Made by a program: the position numbers and the translations under genes | Virus record (IMG/VR): IMGVR_UViG_3300005253_001115 | Location: 186,001-250,000 of that record | Direction: 5' to 3' (one strand) | DNA length: 64,000 nt | The notes under the pieces: model-generated | What the model saw: only the letters and a program-made list of their open reading frames with translations | Database searches by the model: none | What the model was told of the DNA's origin: nothing | In this document: in pieces, positions 12,275-63,565 of the stretch | How the letters are laid out: each line of letters opens with the position of its first letter | How positions within the stretch are numbered: the stretch's first letter is position 1

Positions 12275-13726
12275 ATGATTACTGGAATGCTTGAAGACAA
12301 TTTCATCCTGGCGGCTGACTCATACAAGGTCGGCCACATCAACCACCTCCCGATAGGGACTCGCAAGACCCACACCTCCATGGTGCCACGGAAGCCCTTC
12401 GTGGACGAGGAACACGGTATCTTGATTGACGAAATCGTCGTTCTCGGTCCCCAGGTCGTCGCTGCGGTCCTCCAGTCTGTAGTCATCACCGATGCGATGA
12501 TTGACGAGGCCGAAATCGAAATCACGGAACAGGGTTACGACTTCCCCCGAGCACAATGGGAATACCTTCGTGACCTTGGGTACCTGCCTCTCGACGTGCG
12601 GGCGATGCCGGAAGGCACTATCGTACAGCCCGGTATCCCGATCATGACGATCGAGAACACGGACGACCGCTCCGCGTGGCTCCCCGCCTACGTCGAGACG
12701 TGGACCCAGGATATCGTGTGGTGTCTTTCGACTATTGCCTCCAAGGTTCGCTGGCTTCGTAATCAGGTGGATATCTTCAACGAGAACACCGGCTGCGACT
12801 ACGAGAACGGCGAGTACATGATCCACAACTTTGGGGATCGTGGGGCTGGTGGACGAGACGGGGCCATCATGGCTGGCATCGCTCACGCCGTGTTCTTCAG
12901 TGGGTCCGACTGCCTTTCGGCTAACCGTTACATCAAGCGGATCTACAACATGGACGGCCCGGTGCTGTCCTCGGTGGATGCCAACGAACACTCGACGGTA
13001 TGTGCCAACTCTGACTGCGATAACAAGGACGACTCGGCAGCGTTCGAGATGACCCTCGCGAATCTGGAGAAGGTGGTAGAGCGCGCCAACCGGGGCATCG
13101 GGGTTCCGGTCCAGTCATGCTTGATCGACACTTTCGATGACGAGCGGTACATCAAGGAGTTCGTGATTCCGAACATCAAGCGGATCAGAGAAAGCGGCGG
13201 CAAGTACGTATGCCGCCCGGACTCGGGAAACGCCATCACGAAGCCTATCGAGGTATGCCAGTGGCTTCTCGATGGATTCGGTCCCGGTCGGCTACTAAAT
13301 TGCAGGGAGTTCGAGATGCTTCCCGAGTACCTTGGAGTCATCCAAGGTGACGGGCTGAAGCTGTGGGACTTCACTACCATCTTCCGGCTTGCCGAGAAGA
13401 ACAAGCTGGCGGCTAGCAACTTCGTCTTCGGCTTCGGTGGTGGCCTGACCAATGGCTCCGGTCGGGACGACTTCAGCTTCTCGATGAAGGCCACAGCCCG
13501 CCAGAACGCTGCCGGTGTATGGGAAGCCATGCACAAGCAACCCAAGACGGACCCGGGCAAGAACTCGCTCCGGGGCCGGGTCGGGGTAATCTCCAAGGGT
13601 GGACAGTTCGTCGTATCAGAATACGAATACGGTGAGTATCATCAGGAAATGGTCTCCATCTATTTCGACGGCGGTCTGCTCTACACCCGGGCCTTCGATG
13701 AGGTCCGAGAAGCAGCGAGGATGTAG
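12275..13726 (+). CDS. nadV: nicotinamide phosphoribosyltransferase
   Basis: DSYKVGH, PEGT, HNFGDRG, ANEHS, CRPDSG, VIQGDG, FGFGGGL, RDDFSFSMKAT, KQPKTDPGKNS. Confidence 0.93.
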   Translation: MITGMLEDNFILAADSYKVGHINHLPIGTRKTHTSMVPRKPFVDEEHGILIDEIVVLGPQVVAAVLQSVVITDAMIDEAEIEITEQGYDFPRAQWEYLRDLGYLPLDVRAMPEGTIVQPGIPIMTIENTDDRSAWLPAYVETWTQDIVWCLSTIASKVRWLRNQVDIFNENTGCDYENGEYMIHNFGDRGAGGRDGAIMAGIAHAVFFSGSDCLSANRYIKRIYNMDGPVLSSVDANEHSTVCANSDCDNKDDSAAFEMTLANLEKVVERANRGIGVPVQSCLIDTFDDERYIKEFVIPNIKRIRESGGKYVCRPDSGNAITKPIEVCQWLLDGFGPGRLLNCREFEMLPEYLGVIQGDGLKLWDFTTIFRLAEKNKLAASNFVFGFGGGLTNGSGRDDFSFSMKATARQNAAGVWEAMHKQPKTDPGKNSLRGRVGVISKGGQFVVSEYEYGEYHQEMVSIYFDGGLLYTRAFDEVREAARM

Positions 13727-52954: not shown

Positions 52955-53296
52955 TTAGTGTATCCTACCTTTCATGGTCGCAGTTGAGACTGAAGTGGTG
53001 TCCTTCAGCGGATCTTGTCCTGCGGGAACGATGTAATCGAAACCCCGTATTTCTTGCTTTACTTTATTCAAGGTCGCTACCACACCATCCCAATACATCG
53101 AGAGATCCGGTGGCATGTCCCCGCCAGAGACCACTACGTGGTAGGCATTCGTCCTGATCTTCTGCTCAATCGCGAATCCAAGCTGGTGAGGGCCGGTGAT
53201 AATGGAACCCATCTGGCCCAGCTTGTCATTCCAGTTGACGATCTCGTAATCGAGGTATCCGATGCCTTTGCCGTTTAGCGTGAATCTGATACGCAT
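52955..53296 (-). CDS. hypothetical protein
   Basis: 113-aa ORF coupled to the upstream large gene. Confidence 0.6.
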   Translation of the reverse strand: MRIRFTLNGKGIGYLDYEIVNWNDKLGQMGSIITGPHQLGFAIEQKIRTNAYHVVVSGGDMPPDLSMYWDGVVATLNKVKQEIRGFDYIVPAGQDPLKDTTSVSTATMKGRIH

Positions 53297-55557
53297 TAGT
53301 AGCCCCTCAGCGTGGCGATGATAAGGGCCATGTGCTCAGGGTCGTCCCGAACCATAGCACCCCACATGTGCTCGTTGTAGAATGCCTGGACCCCCATAGA
53401 GACTAGCTCGCCATGCCCTTCCCGGTCACCGTAGCTCTTACCACAGTAGACAGAGAAGAAGTGGTCAGGAATGAACTCCTCGTTTTTGTCATAGTGCCTC
53501 AGGTCAGGATACGGCTGCCCTGTTTTGGGGTCAATATCCCCGTTCCTGACGAGGGGCTGGCCTTCTGTCCGGTTCTTGTAGAAACCAGAGAAACGTCGAG
53601 CTGTATCGGGGTTGCTAAACTCCATGTGGTGCGCGAATTCGTGGATGGCGATATCGTCCCTGTCCGAAGCCGACCCCCCGCTGTACTTGCGTGTGGTGTC
53701 CCACATCTCATGCTTAGGTACCTTCTTGAGGTCCGCCCCTACACTGAGGCAGATACGCCCGTCGGACGAGCTGGCGTAGGCTCGCACCATAACCTCCGAT
53801 TCCCATGTTATGCCCACCATCCCCGGCCCACCCACCACATCACGGTGGGCAATCGAGAACAGGTCTTGTAGGCTCTCTTGGATCTTAGCGGAATTCGGAT
53901 AGCGTGAGCTTTCCTCCAGCGTCTCCTTGGATATCTGGTCTCGGTGCTTCTGTCTCAAGACCAACAGCTTCTTTCCTGTCAAGCCAGCGATGCCCTTGCC
54001 TTTCGCGACTGTGTAGTCCTCATCTTTTTCGTTAATCTCAGCCCACGCAGCATTCCCTACATTGTGCAGTATTTCACCAGCGCTTTCGGCATCAATTTGG
54101 GTGTATTGGTTGACTTTCCTCATTGCATTTTTGATGGGTTGGCGAATTTTCTCCGCCTCCTTCAGGATCTTTTCGCTCGCCCGTAGTACGCCCATGTGCG
54201 CGTTTCTTCCGAGTTGGTCGATGGCATCTTTGTCGTCTTCTAGGTCAGAGACCAGTTTAGCGAATTCACCCGTCTCCAGAGACTTGCTGTCTCTACGCTT
54301 TAGGATGTCAGCCTTTCTAGTTTGGTACTCCTTTTCGAATTCCTCAGAAGCGTATTCTGCCTCTGCCAGGGCGGACCCTGCCAGCATGTAAGCTCTTTGT
54401 GCCGCGTCGATACCAGACCAATCAGCCCACTGCTTCATTTCCGTGGTCGCTTTCTCAGCAGCTTTGCGGTGATCGTGAAGATAGGAGTTCGGTGTCCATG
54501 ATTCACTTAGACCGAAGCTCTCCCACAACATCCTGTTCGCCGACTCATCTCCAACTCTGGCCGAGCGGTCTAGTATTGCCATCGCCAGCTTCGTATTAGT
54601 CTCGAAGGGGGACCTTTCAACGGGGTCGATTTGTTGCCCCATTCGCATTCGAAGCAAGTTCTGAAGAGTAACGGGTGCATCGGGATCATCCACGAACATC
54701 CTAGCTAAGTCGGCTCCTCCGAGTGTGGGCGACTCCCGCCAACTCGCCAGAAGCTCTTTCATTTTCGTTATCTTGCGGTAGGCGAGGTCCCGCCCAGAGT
54801 CCGGGATAGCGTCCATGTCAAAATTAGACAACTGTAGTAGATCTTCTACCTCTAGAGTTTCCGGTCTATTTTGTACCTTGTCCCAGGTTTGAATGTCTCG
54901 CGGGTCGTCAGCCTTGATCGAGCTATTGAACTGATCCACAGCGAACTGGGCTTTGTCTACTTTCTTTTTGAAGTAGTTACCGCCTCTCTTGCTGGGCGGA
55001 ATATCCTTATTGCTAATAAACTCCAGCGCCTCGTTTACAGCGGCTTGTAGCGCCTCGACGGCCTTCAGGTTCTCGGCCCTGTCGTCGCTTTGGAGAGCCT
55101 GGGCAGCCTCTTTCAGCTTGATGGCTTTGGTGTTGCCCTTCGGGGTTCTAACCAGTACAGCCTGAAGGGACTCAAGAGCTTGAGCCACCATGTCCTTCTG
55201 GCGTGCCCACTGTCCTTCCGGCACCAACTCAATAGCCTCCGCAGAGGGGCCAGGCTCCTCAGGAGCGGGCTCGCTGGGCTTGTTGTCATCCCAGTCCACA
55301 TCCCGCTCGTTACGCTCGTCAGCGGAGTTCTCGTCGGTCCAGTAAGGGTTCTCTCCTGGCTCTGGTCGGTGAGCTTCTCCGTCGTGGCAGTCCTTGTCTT
55401 TTGAGATCCACCCGTCACCACAAGGGATATCGTCGGGACTGTTAGGTACTTTGTCGCCCGCGTAAGCAGGGTCCTCGTCTTCCGTAATGAAGCTGTCCCA
55501 ATTCAAAAAATCACGCATCGGTAGCCACCTAAAGGGGTTTACACTAGAAATAACCAT
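53296..55557 (-). CDS. large protein with C-terminal HExxH zincin-like domain (possible virion or ejected protein)
   Basis: N-terminal CGDGWISKDKDCH, helical middle, IHEFAHHME...YCGKSY...ELVSMG. Confidence 0.65.
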   Translation of the reverse strand: MVISSVNPFRWLPMRDFLNWDSFITEDEDPAYAGDKVPNSPDDIPCGDGWISKDKDCHDGEAHRPEPGENPYWTDENSADERNERDVDWDDNKPSEPAPEEPGPSAEAIELVPEGQWARQKDMVAQALESLQAVLVRTPKGNTKAIKLKEAAQALQSDDRAENLKAVEALQAAVNEALEFISNKDIPPSKRGGNYFKKKVDKAQFAVDQFNSSIKADDPRDIQTWDKVQNRPETLEVEDLLQLSNFDMDAIPDSGRDLAYRKITKMKELLASWRESPTLGGADLARMFVDDPDAPVTLQNLLRMRMGQQIDPVERSPFETNTKLAMAILDRSARVGDESANRMLWESFGLSESWTPNSYLHDHRKAAEKATTEMKQWADWSGIDAAQRAYMLAGSALAEAEYASEEFEKEYQTRKADILKRRDSKSLETGEFAKLVSDLEDDKDAIDQLGRNAHMGVLRASEKILKEAEKIRQPIKNAMRKVNQYTQIDAESAGEILHNVGNAAWAEINEKDEDYTVAKGKGIAGLTGKKLLVLRQKHRDQISKETLEESSRYPNSAKIQESLQDLFSIAHRDVVGGPGMVGITWESEVMVRAYASSSDGRICLSVGADLKKVPKHEMWDTTRKYSGGSASDRDDIAIHEFAHHMEFSNPDTARRFSGFYKNRTEGQPLVRNGDIDPKTGQPYPDLRHYDKNEEFIPDHFFSVYCGKSYGDREGHGELVSMGVQAFYNEHMWGAMVRDDPEHMALIIATLRGY

Positions 55558-55578
55558 CTAATGAGGGCATCGGATTCC

Positions 55579-56115
55579 CTAGTTGCCCCTTTCTTTCATC
55601 TTTTTGGCCCACTTCTTCTGCCACTCGGACTGCGGAGTGTCGTTCAGAATATCCTCGACCGAAGCCGTAGCCCTGTGTGGCCCAGAGGCTCTTGTTTGCG
55701 ATCTACGGGCTTTTCTCCTTCTAGGCGATGGCGGAGTGGCCTTAGCGAAGAGGTGGTCCCTCTGCTCGTCATAGTAACCGTCAGGGCCAGATTTGTAATA
55801 CTTCAGGGTTGGATCGTTGGTTCCCCAGTTCGGCGGGGGCGGCTTCCTTCTGGCTTCCTTCCGCTTCTTCTCCCTATGGTGGTAAGAGGTCCCCGTGGGG
55901 GGTTTTGACCTTATCACCGGCTCTCGGTACGGACACTTCCCTGCCTTGGTGGGGTTGGTGATTGCTCGGTAGGCCCAATTGACCAATTGGAACTCCATAT
56001 CTGGTAGATCCGGGTTCAGGTCAGGATGGGTTTCCCTGGAGAGCTTCCGGTAAGCGTTCTTGATCCGCTTCCTAGTGGAACCTCTTTCAATTTCGAGCAC
56101 CTTGTACGGGTCCAT
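55579..56115 (-). CDS. J-domain (DnaJ-like) protein
   Basis: MDPYKVLEI...IKNAYRKLSRETHPDLN...FQLVNWAY. Confidence 0.85.
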   Translation of the reverse strand: MDPYKVLEIERGSTRKRIKNAYRKLSRETHPDLNPDLPDMEFQLVNWAYRAITNPTKAGKCPYREPVIRSKPPTGTSYHHREKKRKEARRKPPPPNWGTNDPTLKYYKSGPDGYYDEQRDHLFAKATPPSPRRRKARRSQTRASGPHRATASVEDILNDTPQSEWQKKWAKKMKERGN

Positions 56116-56273: not shown

Positions 56274-56678
56274 TCATTTTCTCTCCTCTGCCGCGAAATG
56301 CTGCTGAACATCCGACAGAAGCTCGTCCAGCTTCCCCTCAAGGATGTCCTTGTAGCGATAGGTCTTCCCGGAACGGTGGTCCTTCACACGCTGATCGGAC
56401 TCGTGATAAGTCCTTACACGTTCTGTACTTGTAGCCTCTACTTGCGTTTTAGCGGCCTCTTTCATCAGAGGCACGAGGATATTCGTCATGCGCTTGAAGG
56501 CAGCCTTCTTGTTCTTTCCCTGCTCCTTATGCTCCTCGGCTTTAGCTGTAATCCCAGTTTCTACATGTGTTAATCGAACAGCCGTATCCCTTTTATTTCG
56601 ATTTTGACCACCTTTGCCGCTAGCGCGGTAGTAGTCGATTCTGATGTCTTCTTTACGAACTGTCTGTGGCCACGCCAT
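56274..56678 (-). CDS. stand-alone GGQ peptide release factor domain protein (ArfB/PrfH-like)
   Basis: YRASGKGGQNRNKRDTAVRLTH...Q..NK..A...RVRTY...RVKDHR; start MAWPQT. Confidence 0.88.
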   Translation of the reverse strand: MAWPQTVRKEDIRIDYYRASGKGGQNRNKRDTAVRLTHVETGITAKAEEHKEQGKNKKAAFKRMTNILVPLMKEAAKTQVEATSTERVRTYHESDQRVKDHRSGKTYRYKDILEGKLDELLSDVQQHFAAEERK

Positions 56679-56736
56679 TTTGTTTCTCACATGCTTATGT
56701 TTAGGAGGGAGTATTACTAAAGAAAGGATCATCTTT

Positions 56737-57540
56737 ATGTTACTATCATTGCCTTTTGAAGAGATAATTGCACGGTACCAGAAAGGAGAATCCCAAGCAC
56801 AACTTGCTAATAGCTTTAGTGTAGACCGGCGAACTATTAGGAGAAGGCTGGTTAAAGCTGATATACCTCTTAGGTCTGGTGGAGAGGCTTCCAAGGTCCA
56901 AAAAAACAAAGCCTTTACTGCATCCACTGTGGTAAACGAATTGGTCGATGGAATGTTATTAGGTGATGCTTGGATAGAGCAAGGACAAGACAACGCTCGC
57001 CTTGGTATTGAAGTGACCAAAAAATCCGAAGGGTGGATAGAACAGATATCTGATATCCTCACAGCGCACGAGGTCAAGCATTCCATAGGGTATAGAAAAC
57101 CCAGAGAAAAAATAATAAACGGCATTCATACCCGATCAAAGGAAAGCGTTATGCTTAGGACCAGTCTATATCCTAATTTTGCTGTCCAAAGACTACGGTG
57201 GTATCCAGAAGGTACAAAAATAGTGCCCAGAGATTTAGAACTTACTGCAAGTAGTATAGCTCATTGGTATTGGGGTGACGGATCAACCAGCAAGTATATG
57301 GTCCGTCTATACACGAACAATTTCTTAGAAAAAGACTGTGAATTCCTAGTAAGCTGTCTGTTGGAGTTCGGAGTAAGTTTTTCAATAAGCAAAAGTCGCA
57401 AAAATCCTGTTCTTAGTCTGTACAACAATTCTGAAAGAGAAAGGTTTCTGGACCTAGTTCGGGACCACGTTCCAGAATGTTTCGAATACAAAGTACAAAA
57501 ACCTGTAATAGTGAGAAGAAGCAAGCCTACTCTTTTTTGA
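56737..57540 (+). CDS. LAGLIDADG homing endonuclease with N-terminal HTH
   Basis: GMLLGDAWI and HWYWGDGS motifs, WYPEGTKIVP, LYTNNF, FEYK; AT-rich. Confidence 0.85.
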   Translation: MLLSLPFEEIIARYQKGESQAQLANSFSVDRRTIRRRLVKADIPLRSGGEASKVQKNKAFTASTVVNELVDGMLLGDAWIEQGQDNARLGIEVTKKSEGWIEQISDILTAHEVKHSIGYRKPREKIINGIHTRSKESVMLRTSLYPNFAVQRLRWYPEGTKIVPRDLELTASSIAHWYWGDGSTSKYMVRLYTNNFLEKDCEFLVSCLLEFGVSFSISKSRKNPVLSLYNNSERERFLDLVRDHVPECFEYKVQKPVIVRRSKPTLF

Positions 57541-57546
57541 AAATTC

Positions 57547-57980
57547 CTGCGCCGTAGACACCATAGTACCGGATTACACTGTCATGTTGGTCTACGGCGC
57601 AGAACGAGGCACGGCATTCTCCTTTTGGATTACACTGCTATGTAGGACGTTCCTCTTTGAAAATTCCTGCGCCGCAGACATCATAATGTCGGGTTACATC
57701 ACCGAGTCGGTCTGCGGCGCAAGTTAAAATGTAGTAGACACGGCAAGACCACTCGGGCTACAACTTCAACACGGCCGTGTCTACTGTGTTAGAAAAGGAG
57801 GCGCGACATTCTCCTTTTGGGTTACACTGCTATGTGGGCCGTGCCTCTTTGAAAATTCCTGCGCTGCATGGCACGGCTCTGGGGGGTTACAACATCGCTA
57901 AGGCCACACAGCGCAGGTTAAAATGTAGTAGACACGGCATATCCCAAACGGGTTACAACATTCTGCTGGCCGTGTCTACT
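57547..57980 (-). ncRNA. TIGR-like stem-loop guide array A (7 units)
   Basis: Each unit on + strand: stem-CA-N9-NGG(G/A)TTACA-N9-NGG-stem; cores at 57559, 57615, 57679, 57744 (8-nt first spacer, GGGCTACA), 57807, 57872, 57938. Confidence 0.88.
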
Positions 57981-57989
57981 TTCGTTAGA

Positions 57990-58814
57990 TCAATCCGATA
58001 CCTTCCGCCACTGCTTCCACAGTTCCCGCAGGATGCGCTTCGACAGGAGCCTACGCTGGTGTAGGAAGATGTGGCCCGTTGTCCAGTCAGGGTGTGCAGC
58101 AGCAGCTTTGGCCTTCACTCCCTCAGAATATTGGTAGAATTCATTGTTGGTCTTCTTGCCGTTCTGGTGAACAGTACCCTGCACAACGAACATCATGGAT
58201 CTCCTGCTCGGGTTGTAACCGTGCAGTTTAGCCATTTCAGTGCCACGTCGAAGGCGCTGGCGAACCATGGGATCTTGCGCATTCTCGGACACCATACCTA
58301 GCCCAAAACGCTTCCACAATTTAGCGGGCGTGGCGAAATTACGCAAGTCGGCTCCGGCTTCTGCCAATATCCTTCCTACAGCTAGGAGGCTCAGGCCGGG
58401 GGTTCCTTTACCGGGGCGACCAACCCACGAAGCGATCGGCATACCTGCCACTATGGCAGTGATGTCTTTGTGGTATTGCCTTATTTGGGGGTCGAAGCCC
58501 CTGATAGCAGGGACCATAGCGAGCGCCATAATCTCCACTTTCGCAGCAAATACCTCTATTGGGTCGGTGGAGGTCCGATCAATCTCGTCAGGCTTCACAT
58601 GCAACATCCACTTTTTGTGGACGGCAGTTGCCAGCGCTCCGTCTTTTGTGCAGAGAGCGTACTTCTTAACGAAGCACGTCTTACCTTTGCAGTGGTGGTC
58701 CTGCACAGCACGCTTGATGACGCCATGTAACTGCTGGTTGAGGGACTCTCTTGCTCTCTCAAGATTCAGACAATCTCTATGGAGGCCGAGGAGTTTAGTG
58801 ATTTCGTTGTGCAT
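57990..58814 (-). CDS. Nop-domain / IS110 C-terminal-like RNA-binding protein lacking a nuclease domain (TasA-like)
   Basis: Starts directly with a coiled coil; PGLSLLAVGRILAEAG.DLRNFATPAKLWKRFGLG, GYNPSRRS, H..QRRLLSKRILRELWKQWR; no DEDD/RuvC or HNH domain and no IS110 SSG motif. Confidence 0.82.
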   Translation of the reverse strand: MHNEITKLLGLHRDCLNLERARESLNQQLHGVIKRAVQDHHCKGKTCFVKKYALCTKDGALATAVHKKWMLHVKPDEIDRTSTDPIEVFAAKVEIMALAMVPAIRGFDPQIRQYHKDITAIVAGMPIASWVGRPGKGTPGLSLLAVGRILAEAGADLRNFATPAKLWKRFGLGMVSENAQDPMVRQRLRRGTEMAKLHGYNPSRRSMMFVVQGTVHQNGKKTNNEFYQYSEGVKAKAAAAHPDWTTGHIFLHQRRLLSKRILRELWKQWRKVSD

Positions 58815-58829
58815 TTTCTAATCCTTGTA

Positions 58830-59152
58830 GGAGCGGCACGGAATGCTCCAAACGGGTTACACTGCATCTATGTCCGTGCCGCTCCGTAATATAGGGCGGT
58901 TGGTCAATGAGATTTCGGGTTACAAATGGGAGTTGGACCAACCATCCTGTAAAGTTGGGGCGACGCCGCACAGCGGATTCGGGTTGCATGAGCGCATCGA
59001 CAGCGTAGCCCCTTTGTAAGTTATGAGCGGCGCGACACTCTCCCAAAGGGTTGCATCACGGCGGTGGTCGCGCCGCTCTGTTATATTGAGTATTTTAGTG
59101 AGGTTGGTCACTCTTCTAGAGGGTTACACCGGTCTTTTGGACCAGCCTCACT
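58830..59152 (-). ncRNA. TIGR-like stem-loop guide array B (5 units)
   Basis: Same architecture; cores at 58842, 58905, 58969, 59036, 59109. Confidence 0.88.
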
Positions 59153-59157
59153 GTGAT

Positions 59158-59739
59158 TTACATGTAAGTCCTCTCGCGTAGTCTCTCGACAAACTCATCC
59201 TGAACGACTGAGCCTACCGTGCGCTTGTCTCCGGCGGAGACGCCTTCGGCCTGCATCTTGTCTGCAATGGCGAAGAGCATCCGTGCGTCACGTCCGAAGG
59301 TGCCAGACTTCTTGTCTCGCATCTGCGCCTCGGTGGTCACCTGATCGAACGTAGCAGAGCGCAACTTCACGCCCCCGTGGGTCAGGTAGAATGTGTCCAT
59401 GTAGAGCGCAGCGACGGTCTCAGCACTTGCTGCGTCGGCTGCTGCTGTTCTCTTGGACTTGTTTGGCTTGGCGGCTCCGGTTGAGGGTGCCTGGGGCGTG
59501 ATAGGCAGAACCCGAGACTGCGACCGAAGTCGCTGCACGATGTTGTTGATCTGACTGTTGGCGAAGCGCTTCCAGACTTCCGTCTCGATAGCAGACGCCA
59601 TCGCAGGGCTCAGATTATCAATCTCAGCATCAGCGACAGCAAGAAAGGCAGCTTTCGCCTTCTCCCAATCTCCGCTGCTTGCTGTCCACGCTGTCTCAGC
59701 CCACTTGGCAAAGACCTCTTCTATGTCTACGGAACTCAT
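59158..59739 (-). CDS. unknown protein embedded between guide arrays
   Basis: 193-aa ORF with AAGGA SD, co-oriented with the TasA-like gene. Confidence 0.75.
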   Translation of the reverse strand: MSSVDIEEVFAKWAETAWTASSGDWEKAKAAFLAVADAEIDNLSPAMASAIETEVWKRFANSQINNIVQRLRSQSRVLPITPQAPSTGAAKPNKSKRTAAADAASAETVAALYMDTFYLTHGGVKLRSATFDQVTTEAQMRDKKSGTFGRDARMLFAIADKMQAEGVSAGDKRTVGSVVQDEFVERLRERTYM

Positions 59740-59787
59740 ACGTTTTCCTTCTTTATCCCCGTGGCAAAATCGCCCGGTGGAAATGTA

Positions 59788-59903
59788 GCGGTCCTGACAC
59801 CTTGAAAGTGGGTTACAAGTTCTTTATGGTCAGGACCGCCGTTGAAGTATAGCAGGTCGGTCAGTGGCGACAAGGGTTACAAACACAGAAAGGACCGACA
59901 CTG
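59788..59903 (-). ncRNA. TIGR-like stem-loop guide array C (2 units)
   Basis: Cores at 59798 and 59862 with inverted-repeat stems. Confidence 0.85.
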
Positions 59904-59931
59904 AATCCAATGAATAGGTAGCTTTCGAACA

Positions 59932-60387
59932 TCAGCTTTCAACCTCTTTCTTCTCCAAGTAGAAGAAATCCAGACCCTCAGGTTCTTTCTCTCCTCGAAA
60001 GATGAGAGCAGCAGCCCCCATGCAAATATTGTCACCTAGGATCTTCTGTACCTTGGCAACCGCTTGCCCAGAAGACACCACATCGTCCACGATAAGGTAC
60101 TTCTTTTTGCTGAACCCAGGGCCGCGCGTGCGGTTCTCCAGGGTTAGCACCTTCACTCGTGGCTTGTTGAGTATCCCGGCCACCACGAAGGCAAGCTCGA
60201 TGCCGCCGATAATCGGGGTGGCGATAAAGTCTATCTCGTCTCGCAACGTTTCGGGGATCAACTCTGCAAGTTGCTCTGCATACTCTGTCGTAGCTCGGCT
60301 GTCGAGTAGATCGAAGTCGTAGTAATACGGAGAACTCCTACCAGAGGTAAGTTCGTGGTCTTCTTTGATCCGGCATTCCTCGAACAT
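59932..60387 (-). CDS. orotate phosphoribosyltransferase-like type I PRTase
   Basis: LTSGRSSPYYYD, PRPP-binding LIVDDVVSSG. Confidence 0.78.
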   Translation of the reverse strand: MFEECRIKEDHELTSGRSSPYYYDFDLLDSRATTEYAEQLAELIPETLRDEIDFIATPIIGGIELAFVVAGILNKPRVKVLTLENRTRGPGFSKKKYLIVDDVVSSGQAVAKVQKILGDNICMGAAALIFRGEKEPEGLDFFYLEKKEVES

Positions 60388-62554: not shown

Positions 62555-63565
62555 TTAGATCGTTTCTCTGAAAAGCGAGGAGATGCTCTCTTCGTTGTTG
62601 GTGCGGCGAATTGCCTCACCCATTAGAGGTGCGATGCTTACTACCTGCACCTTGTTGTAACCGTCGTTCTCGGCGTTACGCGGGATTGGGTCTCGGGCAA
62701 TCAAAGCCACTGTATCGGTGGTGAGCAGCTTCGTGAGCCCCTTCGTGTTGCCCATAGTCTTGTAGGCGTTCCCCGAGAGAACCGGGTGTGTGATGGCCGC
62801 AATGGCGCTCGTTGCGCCCTGCTCCATCAGGGCATCGACGCCCTTGCACAAGGTACCGGCAGTGTCGATCATATCGTCAACAATCACGCAGACTTGACCC
62901 TCCACATCGCCTACGATATTCATGACTTCGTTCTCGTTGGAGCGAGCACGCCGCTTGTCGATGATGGCGATCGGTGCCTCAAGCCTCTTGGCGTAAGCCC
63001 GTGCCCTCTCTGTACCACCAGCATCCGGCGATATGATAGTGAAGGGGGTGAGTCCCACTTCCTTGCGGACAGATTCCAATAGAACAGGCTTGGCGTACAG
63101 GTTGTCTACCGGGCAATCGAAGAACGCCTGGATCTGCCCGGCATGCAGGTCCATGCACATTACACGGTCTGCGCCAGCCCTGTCGATCAGGGACGCTACC
63201 AGCTTGGAAGTGATGGGCATTCGAGCAGCGTTCTGCTGGTCCTGGCGAGAGTACCCGAAGTACGGGATGACTGCTGTGATGCGACCAGCAGAGGACCGAC
63301 GCAAGGCGTCGATCATAATGAGCAGTTCCATCAGGTTCCGGTTGGTGTGGGGCGGGCAAGTCGGTTGGACGATGAAACAATCAGCGCCTCTTACGTTCTC
63401 CCCGATTGCTACCTTGATCTCACCGTCGCTGAAACGATCTACCTCGGCCTTGCCTAGAGGGCGGTCCAGATAATCAGCCACGTCGTGGGCTAGCTGGGGG
63501 TTGGCGTTTCCAGTGAATACCCGGATATCACCCTTCATTCCTCGCTCCTTCATTTGTTGTACCAT
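62555..63565 (-). CDS. prs: ribose-phosphate pyrophosphokinase (PRPP synthetase)
   Basis: FSDGE, NLMELLIMIDALRRSSA, PYFGYSRQD, DLHAGQIQAFF, SPDAGG, IVDDMIDTAGT, THPVLS; start may be 63538. Confidence 0.93.
   Translation of the reverse strand: MVQQMKERGMKGDIRVFTGNANPQLAHDVADYLDRPLGKAEVDRFSDGEIKVAIGENVRGADCFIVQPTCPPHTNRNLMELLIMIDALRRSSAGRITAVIPYFGYSRQDQQNAARMPITSKLVASLIDRAGADRVMCMDLHAGQIQAFFDCPVDNLYAKPVLLESVRKEVGLTPFTIISPDAGGTERARAYAKRLEAPIAIIDKRRARSNENEVMNIVGDVEGQVCVIVDDMIDTAGTLCKGVDALMEQGATSAIAAITHPVLSGNAYKTMGNTKGLTKLLTTDTVALIARDPIPRNAENDGYNKVQVVSIAPLMGEAIRRTNNEESISSLFRETI

What the first reader, a model, noticed from the sequence alone, without database searches (positions are those of the whole stretch)
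59158..59739. Unknown gene inside the guide array: candidate novel Tas accessory or effector
Seen: a 193-aa co-oriented ORF lies between arrays C and B, so the minus-strand order is 2 guides, ORF193, 5 guides, TasA-like, 7 guides, plausibly one transcript. It has an N-terminal helical region, a Pro/Ala/Lys linker and a C-terminal domain (GGVKLRSATFDQV...RTVGSVV) with no catalytic motif I recognise. Inference: because the Tas protein has no nuclease, this partner could supply the effector function, such as repression, recruitment, RNA processing or spacer acquisition. This may be the undescribed part of the system.
Basis: inference. Interest (0 to 1): 0.85.

Follow-up and report, generated by a model that had tools for sequence, protein, structure and literature searches.

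The report
Conserved partner gene of phage TasA
The 193-aa gene inside this phage's tandem guide-RNA (TIGR) array is real and belongs to an undescribed protein family that lies just upstream of the nuclease-less RNA-guided protein TasA in about nine of ten related loci, so it is very probably a working partner of that system, although its job is still unknown.

Summary
ORF193 (59158..59739, minus strand) lies between two and five stem-loop TIGR units. tasA (57990..58814) and seven more units follow. All 14 units share a covarying 12-bp stem and a UGUAACCC loop.

ORF193 matches nothing in Pfam, PHROGs, NCBIfam, PADLOC, PDB sequences or the Foldseek libraries. It is still a conserved gene: dN/dS is 0.27-0.64, and the AlphaFold2 model reaches pLDDT 85. 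The model has an N-terminal three-helix domain, a disordered linker and a C-terminal domain.

All 10 sequence relatives with downstream DNA and both domains have a tas gene next, co-oriented. Searching from Tas instead, 30 of 33 assessable non-redundant loci carry a remote homologue of ORF193 directly 5' of tas (hhalign probability 96-98%). TIGR units often lie between the two genes. No other gene family is shared by more than three of these loci.

So ORF193 founds a Tas-linked accessory family that the papers I read do not describe. It resembles TasParB in position only. No catalytic-type residues are conserved, and published TasA proteins repress transcription without such a partner. I therefore favour a non-enzymatic adaptor or assembly subunit of the TasA-tigRNA complex. 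That mechanism is inferred, not shown.

Exceptions are three Tas loci without the partner and one N-domain-only homologue without Tas.

The parts
59158..59739 (-). ORF193, the Tas-partner gene (193 aa plus stop)
   Evidence: ORF listing. Homologues at 28-87% identity. dN/dS 0.27-0.64. AF2 pLDDT 84.7, pTM 0.67.
59512..59739 (-). Codons for the N-terminal three-helix domain (residues 1-76; conserved A14, A17, D24, A28, F32, R72)
   Evidence: AF2 helices at 3-20, 25-40 and 45-76 with pLDDT above 90. Family conservation.
59413..59511 (-). Codons for the disordered Pro/Ala/Lys-rich linker (residues 77-109), variable in length across the family
   Evidence: pLDDT 40-55. Gapped, variable columns in A5.
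59161..59412 (-). Codons for the C-terminal domain (residues 110-193). It holds the family motif L-x-D-A-T, which reads LRSAT here, and is the most widely conserved part.
   Evidence: HMM and hhalign matches centre here. pLDDT 85-95.
59787..59904 (-). TIGR sub-array C: 2 stem-loop units directly 5' of ORF193
58831..59151 (-). TIGR sub-array B: 5 stem-loop units between ORF193 and tasA. The first stem starts 7 nt after the ORF193 stop codon.
57990..58814 (-). tasA: 274-aa nuclease-less Tas protein
   Evidence: NCBIfam NF052498 TIGR_Tas_endo, E 1.1e-10 over residues 112-270, which is below the equivalog cut-off. Relatives score 6.7e-21 and 2.9e-26. No nuclease domain in Pfam.
57548..57980 (-). 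TIGR sub-array A: 7 stem-loop units 3' of tasA, built from a repeated three-unit block
59846..59873 (-). Sigma-70-like promoter match (TTGTCG, 16 nt, TATACT, with TG) inside sub-array C, upstream of ORF193. Weak evidence only.
   Evidence: 3 sites found against 2.4 expected, so no enrichment.

Best explanation
ORF193 encodes a member of a previously undescribed, fast-evolving family of proteins of about 165-200 aa. The family is a dedicated accessory component of a phage clade of stem-loop TIGR-TasA systems.

Shown: the gene is real and under purifying selection. Its relatives lie directly 5' of tas on the same strand in about 90% of assessable loci. They are either translationally coupled to tas or separated from it only by tigRNA units. 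They co-diversify with Tas, while everything around the pair changes.

Inferred mechanism: the protein is a non-enzymatic, two-domain adaptor that joins the TasA-tigRNA complex. One domain would dock on the TasA dimer or the tigRNA stem. The other, on a flexible linker, would contact something else, such as target DNA or a host or phage factor. In this way it would help assembly or maturation of the RNP, or strengthen or redirect RNA-guided repression.

Because the gene is flanked by tigRNA hairpins on one precursor, cutting out the guides would also release its mRNA and so tie its expression to array processing.

My rough split is 0.8 that it works with TasA at all. Within that, about 0.4 for an RNP subunit or adaptor, 0.2 for a tigRNA biogenesis helper, 0.1 for a regulator of the operon, and the rest for other roles.
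For: Real gene: homologues at 28-87% identity with conserved length. dN/dS is 0.27-0.64. AF2 gives pLDDT 84.7 and pTM 0.67 with the 30-sequence alignment.

Linkage, partner-first: all 10 relatives with both domains and enough downstream DNA have a Tas homologue as the next co-oriented gene, at 31-94% identity to the window TasA.

Linkage, Tas-first: scans of viral and metagenome contigs with the TasA alignment gave 42 non-redundant loci. Of the 33 with enough upstream DNA, 30 have a partner homologue directly 5' of tas.

Remote homology: ORFs chosen by position alone match the ORF193 family at hhalign probability 96.4%, E 1.2e-9. An independent second set gives 97.7%, E 1.6e-12 over the full length. 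Negative controls score 0.1-0.2%.

Flanks differ: besides tas, the partner and their frame shadows, no ORF family is shared by more than 3 loci.

Co-diversification: Mantel r is 0.82, with 0 of 2000 permutations as high. The partner evolves faster than Tas.

Architecture: TIGR units lie on the tas strand 279 times against 3 antisense. They typically lie before the partner, between partner and tas, and after tas. Partner stop and tas start overlap in several loci.

Non-enzymatic: the conserved positions are mostly small or hydrophobic. The motif Asp is Ser in the window protein. pI ranges from 4.8 to 10.2.

Precedent: tasParB sits upstream of dual-repeat tasA, with arrays sometimes between the two genes (PMC12045711, section 44).
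Against: No physical interaction, expression or phenotype data exist, and no multimer model could be run.

Three Tas loci of the same clade (L019, L026, L030) have no detectable partner.

One homologue, P0012, keeps only the N-terminal domain (47% identity over about 100 aa). It lies on a 100-kb contig with no tas gene and no TIGR unit within 5 kb.

Published TasA proteins of other clades bind DNA, are loaded with processed guides and repress in E. coli without such a protein (10.64898/2026.09.09.750476; 10.64898/2026.08.11.744272).

Linked genes co-diversify whether or not their products touch, so the Mantel result does not prove interaction.

The Tas sample is limited to the clade caught by the LWKR[FM]G[LV]G pattern. 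All loci are metagenomic.
Confidence: 0.7

Rival explanations
1. tigRNA biogenesis factor. The protein binds the variable stems or the U-rich stem base of the precursor. It would help fold the precursor, load it on TasA, or recruit a host RNase. This would replace the Y/H processing loop that stem-loop Tas proteins lack.
For: The preprint 10.64898/2026.09.09.750476 states that stem-loop Tas proteins lack the processing dyad and that auxiliary factors are not excluded. The gene lies inside the precursor, between units, in most loci. Median pI of the family is 8.6, and the linker is basic.
Against: No nuclease or RNA-binding motif or fold was found. pI is not consistently basic, ranging from 4.8 to 10.2. 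Stem-loop arrays of other Tas proteins are processed in E. coli.
Confidence: 0.15
2. Transcriptional or post-transcriptional regulator of the TIGR-tas operon. It would be an upstream control gene of the kind found with many defence or anti-defence operons, not a part of the RNP.
For: It is small, lies upstream on the same strand and evolves fast. One distant member has a weak HTH_71 hit, E 0.037.
Against: There is no significant HTH or other DNA-binding signature in 30 members. Foldseek finds none of the abundant HTH folds in the PDB. Stop-start overlaps with tas suggest matched dosage rather than regulator levels.
Confidence: 0.08
3. Passenger gene. It would be an unrelated phage gene that stays next to tas by descent, with no role in the system.
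For: All loci come from phage-like metagenomic contigs. The closest relatives are syntenic phages. P0012 shows that the N-domain can exist without Tas.
Against: The pair persists down to 24-38% Tas identity and about 15-20% partner identity, while no flanking family is shared by more than 3 loci. Position and strand are fixed.
Confidence: 0.05
4. Spacer or unit acquisition factor that builds or remodels the array.
For: No adaptation machinery is known for TIGR systems. Unit number and spacers differ sharply between phages whose proteins are about 90% identical.
Against: There is no integrase, nuclease, polymerase or reverse-transcriptase feature, and no invariant acidic or His residues. Array A grew by duplication of a three-unit block, which needs no dedicated enzyme.
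Confidence: 0.02

Closest known systems
TasParB-TasA operons of dual-repeat TIGR systems (Faure et al. 2025, PMC12045711)
   Same: A second protein gene lies upstream of a nuclease-less tasA in one operon. [quoted passage not shown] The operon is conserved while the flanks vary.
   Different: TasParB is a ParB/CTPase-like protein found with dual-repeat arrays. ORF193 has no ParB signature in Pfam and no ParB-like fold by Foldseek, and it goes with stem-loop arrays.
Stem-loop TIGR-TasA systems (PlTasA, MbTasA, BlTasA; PMC12045711, 10.64898/2026.09.09.750476, 10.64898/2026.08.11.744272)
   Same: A nuclease-less Tas protein. Tandem hairpin units with two spacers of about 10 nt, conserved short flanking motifs and variable palindromic stems. 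Sub-arrays on both sides of tas.
   Different: Those systems are described as single-protein effectors that work without a partner. Here a second conserved gene is embedded in the array. The window TasA scores below the NCBIfam equivalog cut-off.
Archaeal and eukaryotic box C/D RNPs (Nop5/Nop56/58 with L7Ae and fibrillarin)
   Same: A Nop-domain protein that works with small partner proteins on a box C/D-type guide RNA. This shows that Nop scaffolds recruit separate subunits.
   Different: ORF193 is almost all-helical. It has no L7Ae or fibrillarin (methyltransferase) signature or fold.
Accessory genes of nuclease-free CRISPR systems (for example type IV with DinG, type V-K with Tn7 proteins)
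   Same: An RNA-guided DNA binder without cleavage activity, paired with a co-encoded protein that gives or modifies the output.
   Different: Those partners are recognisable enzymes or transposition proteins. ORF193 has no recognisable domain. This comparison rests on general knowledge and was not tested here.

Membership tests
TIGR-Tas system, stem-loop type (the locus around ORF193) | Tas protein homologous to the Nop-domain Tas family | tested here: met
   NF052498 TIGR_Tas_endo matches residues 112-270 at E 1.1e-10 (41.9 bits). This is below the 100-bit equivalog cut-off, as expected for a divergent nuclease-less member. Clade relatives score 6.7e-21 and 2.9e-26. The Nop fold itself was not modelled.
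TIGR-Tas system, stem-loop type (the locus around ORF193) | Tandem units, each with two short spacers, conserved flanking and loop motifs, and a variable but palindromic stem | tested here: met
   There are 14 units. Each has the layout stem, CC, 10-nt spacer A, UGUAACCC, 10-nt spacer B, UG, stem. 92.9% of cells are paired, and all 12 pairs have double-sided changes.
TIGR-Tas system, stem-loop type (the locus around ORF193) | [quoted passage not shown] | tested here: inconclusive
   An exact CTT lies within 12 nt 3' of the stem in 4 of 14 units. Most others have a U-rich tract instead, such as ATTTT or ATTTC. Distant loci show CUUU more clearly.
TasA subtype | No HNH or RuvC nuclease domain | tested here: met
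   The protein has 274 aa and no Pfam family hit at all. The N-terminal 110 aa align with a Cys-rich, coiled-coil-like region of relatives.
TasParB | ParB/Srx-like N-terminal domain (CTPase-type) | tested here: not met
   No ParB family reaches E<=1 among the 13 close members, or E<=0.1 among the 11 distant upstream ORFs. No ParB structure appears among the Foldseek hits.
TasParB | Encoded upstream of tasA in one operon, with arrays around and between the genes | tested here: met
Box C/D RNP partners (L7Ae, fibrillarin) | L7Ae alpha-beta sandwich or Rossmann-type methyltransferase fold | tested here: not met
   The model is helical with one short hairpin. There are no Pfam or Foldseek matches.
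New ORF193-like Tas-partner family (defined here) | 165-200 aa, with an N-terminal helical domain (A-x2-A ... D-x3-A ... R), a variable linker and a C-terminal L-x-D-A-T domain | tested here: met
   30-member alignment A5. hhalign 96.4% and 97.7%.
New ORF193-like Tas-partner family (defined here) | Directly 5' of tas and co-oriented with it | tested here: met
   30 of 33 Tas-first loci and 10 of 11 partner-first loci.
New ORF193-like Tas-partner family (defined here) | Physical or functional interaction with TasA or tigRNA | not testable with these tools
   No multimer prediction or experiment was available.

The most novel reading that the evidence does not exclude
The ORF193 family is a required third component of a large phage clade of stem-loop TIGR-TasA systems. 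It would supply one of the functions that the field lists as missing, either guide maturation and loading or coupling of the bound RNP to a downstream output. These systems would then be two-protein machines rather than single effectors.
Probability: 0.3. Interest if true: 0.8.

Novelty: new variant of a known kind. Interest (0 to 1): 0.68.

Why it matters
TIGR-Tas systems were described in 2025 as single-protein, RNA-guided DNA binders. The papers leave open how stem-loop guides mature, how arrays grow, and what nuclease-less TasA does for a phage.

A conserved, array-embedded partner gene gives those questions a concrete candidate. Co-expression, pull-down and deletion can test it. It would also matter for anyone who moves these compact systems into other cells, because a needed cofactor may have been left out.

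The family was probably missed because its members share only about 15-20% identity. Neighbour-gene clustering at 50% identity, as used in PMC12045711, would split it into many tiny clusters.

Tried and rejected
Family and structure searches that found nothing for ORF193 or its relatives:
- Pfam, PHROGs, NCBIfam and PADLOC.
- A profile search of PDB sequences.
- Foldseek of two models against PDB and BFVD. The best E-values were 3 and 0.86, so they are not meaningful.

Collection searches that found nothing:
- tblastn of ORF193 and TasA against 50,697 isolated phage genomes.
- A scan of one genome per prokaryotic species with the close-family alignment.
- A word-indexed profile search with the 30-member alignment added no new members.
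- Two alignments were too divergent for pattern scans.

Hits and ideas rejected:
- The HMMER hit P0014 (655 aa, 8 stretches) is a repeat protein and was discarded as spurious.
- ORF193 as a duplicate of part of Tas: hhalign probability 0.2%.
- ORF193 as a spurious ORF in an array gap: rejected by conservation, dN/dS and the model.
- A hidden TIGR unit inside ORF193: none at E<=1.

Self-targets of the 14 spacer pairs within the window: only one same-strand, one-mismatch pair at 55562-55577. This is about what chance gives and has the wrong geometry.

The TasA profile against PDB sequences did not reach the solved Tas structures.

Full report
**1. What is in the sequence**

The window is part of a 266,640-bp IMG/VR phage contig. 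The same stretch occurs on a 100-kb metagenome contig. The surrounding genes are typical of a large T4-like phage: UvsX-like recombinase, ribonucleotide reductase, SbcC-like nuclease, DNA ligase and NAMPT.

ORF193 runs from 59739 to 59158 on the minus strand, with an ATG start and an AGGA motif 8-11 nt upstream. The loop motif UGUAACCC and close variants occur 14 times on the same strand. Two lie 5' of ORF193, five lie between ORF193 and the 274-aa gene at 57990..58814, and seven lie 3' of that gene.

Each unit has this layout:
- a 12-bp stem;
- CC and a 10-nt spacer;
- the loop UGUAACCC;
- a second 10-nt spacer and UG;
- the closing arm of the stem.

The stems differ in sequence but stay paired. 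92.9% of cells pair, against 55.7% in shuffles. All 12 pairs show compensatory changes, and no slid register comes close. This is the published stem-loop TIGR architecture (PMC12045711, section 9; 10.64898/2026.09.09.750476).

The 274-aa protein matches NCBIfam 'TIGR-Tas system RNA-guided endonuclease' over its C-terminal 160 residues at E 1.1e-10. That is below the equivalog cut-off. Relatives reach 1e-21 to 1e-26. It has no nuclease domain, so 'TasA-like' is justified.

**2. ORF193 is a real gene of unknown type**

No library recognises it. This covers Pfam, PHROGs, NCBIfam, PADLOC and PDB sequences.

A word-indexed search found four relatives at 81-86% identity. A full HMMER pass over 1.84 billion representative proteins found eight more at 28-47%. 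One further hit was a spurious repeat protein.

Between close relatives, dN/dS is 0.27-0.64. This indicates purifying but fairly relaxed selection.

AlphaFold2 with 13 sequences gave pLDDT 79.5. With 30 sequences it gave pLDDT 84.7 and pTM 0.67. The model has a three-helix N-terminal domain (residues 1-76), a disordered linker (77-109), and a C-terminal domain with a short hairpin and four helices (110-193).

Foldseek found nothing significant in the PDB (best E 3) or in BFVD (best E 0.86).

**3. Linkage to Tas, starting from the partner**

I looked up the contigs of all 12 sequence relatives:
- Ten have both domains and enough downstream DNA. In all ten the next gene is co-oriented and is a Tas homologue, at 31-94% identity to the window TasA.
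- Two contigs end too early to judge.
- P0012 keeps only the N-terminal domain and linker. It sits on a 100-kb contig with no tas gene and no TIGR unit within 5 kb.

**4. Linkage to Tas, starting from Tas**

Scans of viral and metagenome contigs with a TasA alignment returned loci whose Tas is only 24-49% identical to the window protein.

The ORF193 HMM gave weak hits, and each of them fell on the ORF directly 5' of tas.

I then aligned upstream ORFs chosen by position alone. That alignment matched the ORF193 family by hhalign at probability 96.4%, E 1.2e-9. A second, independent set from the metagenome loci gave 97.7%, E 1.6e-12 over the full length. Controls scored 0.1-0.2%. The controls were Tas itself and the upstream ORFs of the two loci that lack a partner.

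With a merged profile, 30 of 33 non-redundant loci with enough upstream DNA carry the partner 5' of tas on the same strand. L019, L026 and L030 do not. Nine loci are cut too short to judge.

Clustering of all ORFs shows that only tas, the partner and their frame shadows are shared by more than three loci. The pair is therefore a module and not a leftover of genome synteny.

Partner and Tas distances correlate (Mantel r 0.82, 0 of 2000 permutations as high). The partner diverges faster, with mean p-distance 0.79 against 0.64.

**5. Architecture of the module**

A covariance model of the window's units hit 123 sites in the related loci, all on the tas strand. A motif-plus-stem detector found 279 units on that strand and 3 antisense.

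The usual order is [unit], partner, [units], tas, [units]. A gene inside the guide array is therefore the rule in this clade.

In several loci the partner stop overlaps the start of the tas ORF. In others the tas reading frame stays open through 5-10 units. This fits the published intragenic tigRNAs.

Spacers differ almost completely between phages whose proteins are about 90% identical, although a few units are shared or differ by point changes.

**6. What the protein probably does**

Across 30 members the conserved positions are A14, A17, D24, A28, F32, R72, D115, L126, D128, A129, R153, V175 and L187. D128 is Ser in the window protein. This set looks structural rather than catalytic.

pI ranges from 4.8 to 10.2, so there is no uniform nucleic-acid-binding character.

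The protein has two folded domains on a variable flexible linker, matched dosage with tas, and co-diversification with tas. Together these fit an adaptor subunit of the TasA-tigRNA complex best.

A helper role in guide maturation is the main rival. The 2026 preprint notes that stem-loop Tas proteins lack the processing dyad and that auxiliary factors are not excluded.

A regulator role is less likely because no HTH-type fold is seen. An acquisition role has no supporting feature.

None of these roles is shown. Published TasA proteins of other clades work without such a partner, and three loci here lack it. It may therefore be a modulator rather than an essential part.

**7. Comparison with what is known, and novelty**

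The closest precedent is tasParB. It is found upstream of dual-repeat tasA, with arrays sometimes between the two genes. ORF193 shares that position but not the ParB domain or fold.

The TIGR-Tas papers I read in the held library do not describe this family. Faure et al. state that TasA lacks clear associations with other proteins apart from TasParB. Their neighbour clustering at 50% identity would have split a family this divergent.

I rate the finding as a new variant of a known kind: a TIGR-TasA system with an undescribed conserved accessory gene.

**8. Limits**

- All loci are metagenomic.
- The Tas sample covers only the clade found by the peptide patterns.
- Homology to the distant members rests on profile comparisons at about 15-20% identity.
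- No multimer model, expression data or phenotype is available.

Noticed in passing
window 56644-57540 (+): A 298-aa LAGLIDADG homing endonuclease gene (Pfam LAGLIDADG_2, E 4e-22) with an N-terminal HTH. It lies on the opposite strand and ends right at the last unit of TIGR sub-array A. It separates the array from the next minus-strand gene.
   Followed up: partly
window 56277-56684 (-): A 136-aa RF-1-domain protein, a peptidyl-tRNA hydrolase or ArfB-like rescue factor (Pfam RF-1, E 4e-24). The listed 283-aa ORF at 56274..57125 is an over-long reading of this gene that runs antisense through the homing endonuclease gene.
   Followed up: partly
window 57548-57980 (-): Sub-array A is a repeated three-unit block. 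Units A1 and A4 share a stem. So do units A2, A5 and A7, and units A3 and A6. A3 and A6 differ by one base in spacer A and have the same spacer B. This suggests the array grew by segmental duplication and later point changes.
   Followed up: partly
L020 3020-4432; L028 3023-4495; L017 3254-4486; L031 3095-4621; L041 2167-3672: In distant loci the tas reading frame stays open through 5-10 TIGR units upstream of the Nop region. Either the guides are inside the coding sequence, as recently reported for other Tas genes, or the true start is downstream and the open frame is maintained for another reason.
   Followed up: partly
window 55562-55577 (minus strand), just 5' of the start codon of the 753-aa ORF 53296..55557: Both spacers of unit B3 match here, with one mismatch each. 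The matches overlap by 4 nt and lie on the same strand. This is about what chance gives (expected about 0.35 such pairs over the 14 units), and the geometry is not the published opposite-strand one.
   Followed up: yes
L067 5001-5510 (contig JAJDAN010000060.1, GCA_029261855.1): A 169-aa protein shares only the N-terminal domain and linker of ORF193 (47% identity) and has a different C-terminus. It has no tas gene or TIGR units within 5 kb. A serine recombinase gene lies 2 kb away. The N-domain may therefore be a module used outside Tas systems.
   Followed up: partly
window 59932-60387 (-), 62555-63565 (-), 12275-13726 (+): The phage carries a phosphoribosyltransferase-like gene directly upstream of the array (Pfam Pribosyltran, E 2e-5, just under the cut-off). 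It also carries a PRPP-synthetase-like 336-aa gene, identified only by a weak PHROG cross-hit and by reading the sequence. A nicotinamide phosphoribosyltransferase is also present (PHROG, E 2e-105). Together these form an NAD/nucleotide salvage set.
   Followed up: no
window 55579-56115 (-): The 178-aa ORF begins with a J-domain-like sequence that includes an HPD tripeptide. This was read from the translation only and was not searched.
   Followed up: no
L001 versus L033, L005, L007 (arrays around the partner): Phages whose partner and TasA proteins are 81-91% identical share almost no spacers, and the number of units between the two genes differs (5, 4, 3, 3). A few units are kept exactly, such as TTAGCGATGT / CCCAGAGCCG in the window and L005. 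This hints at conserved targets.
   Followed up: partly
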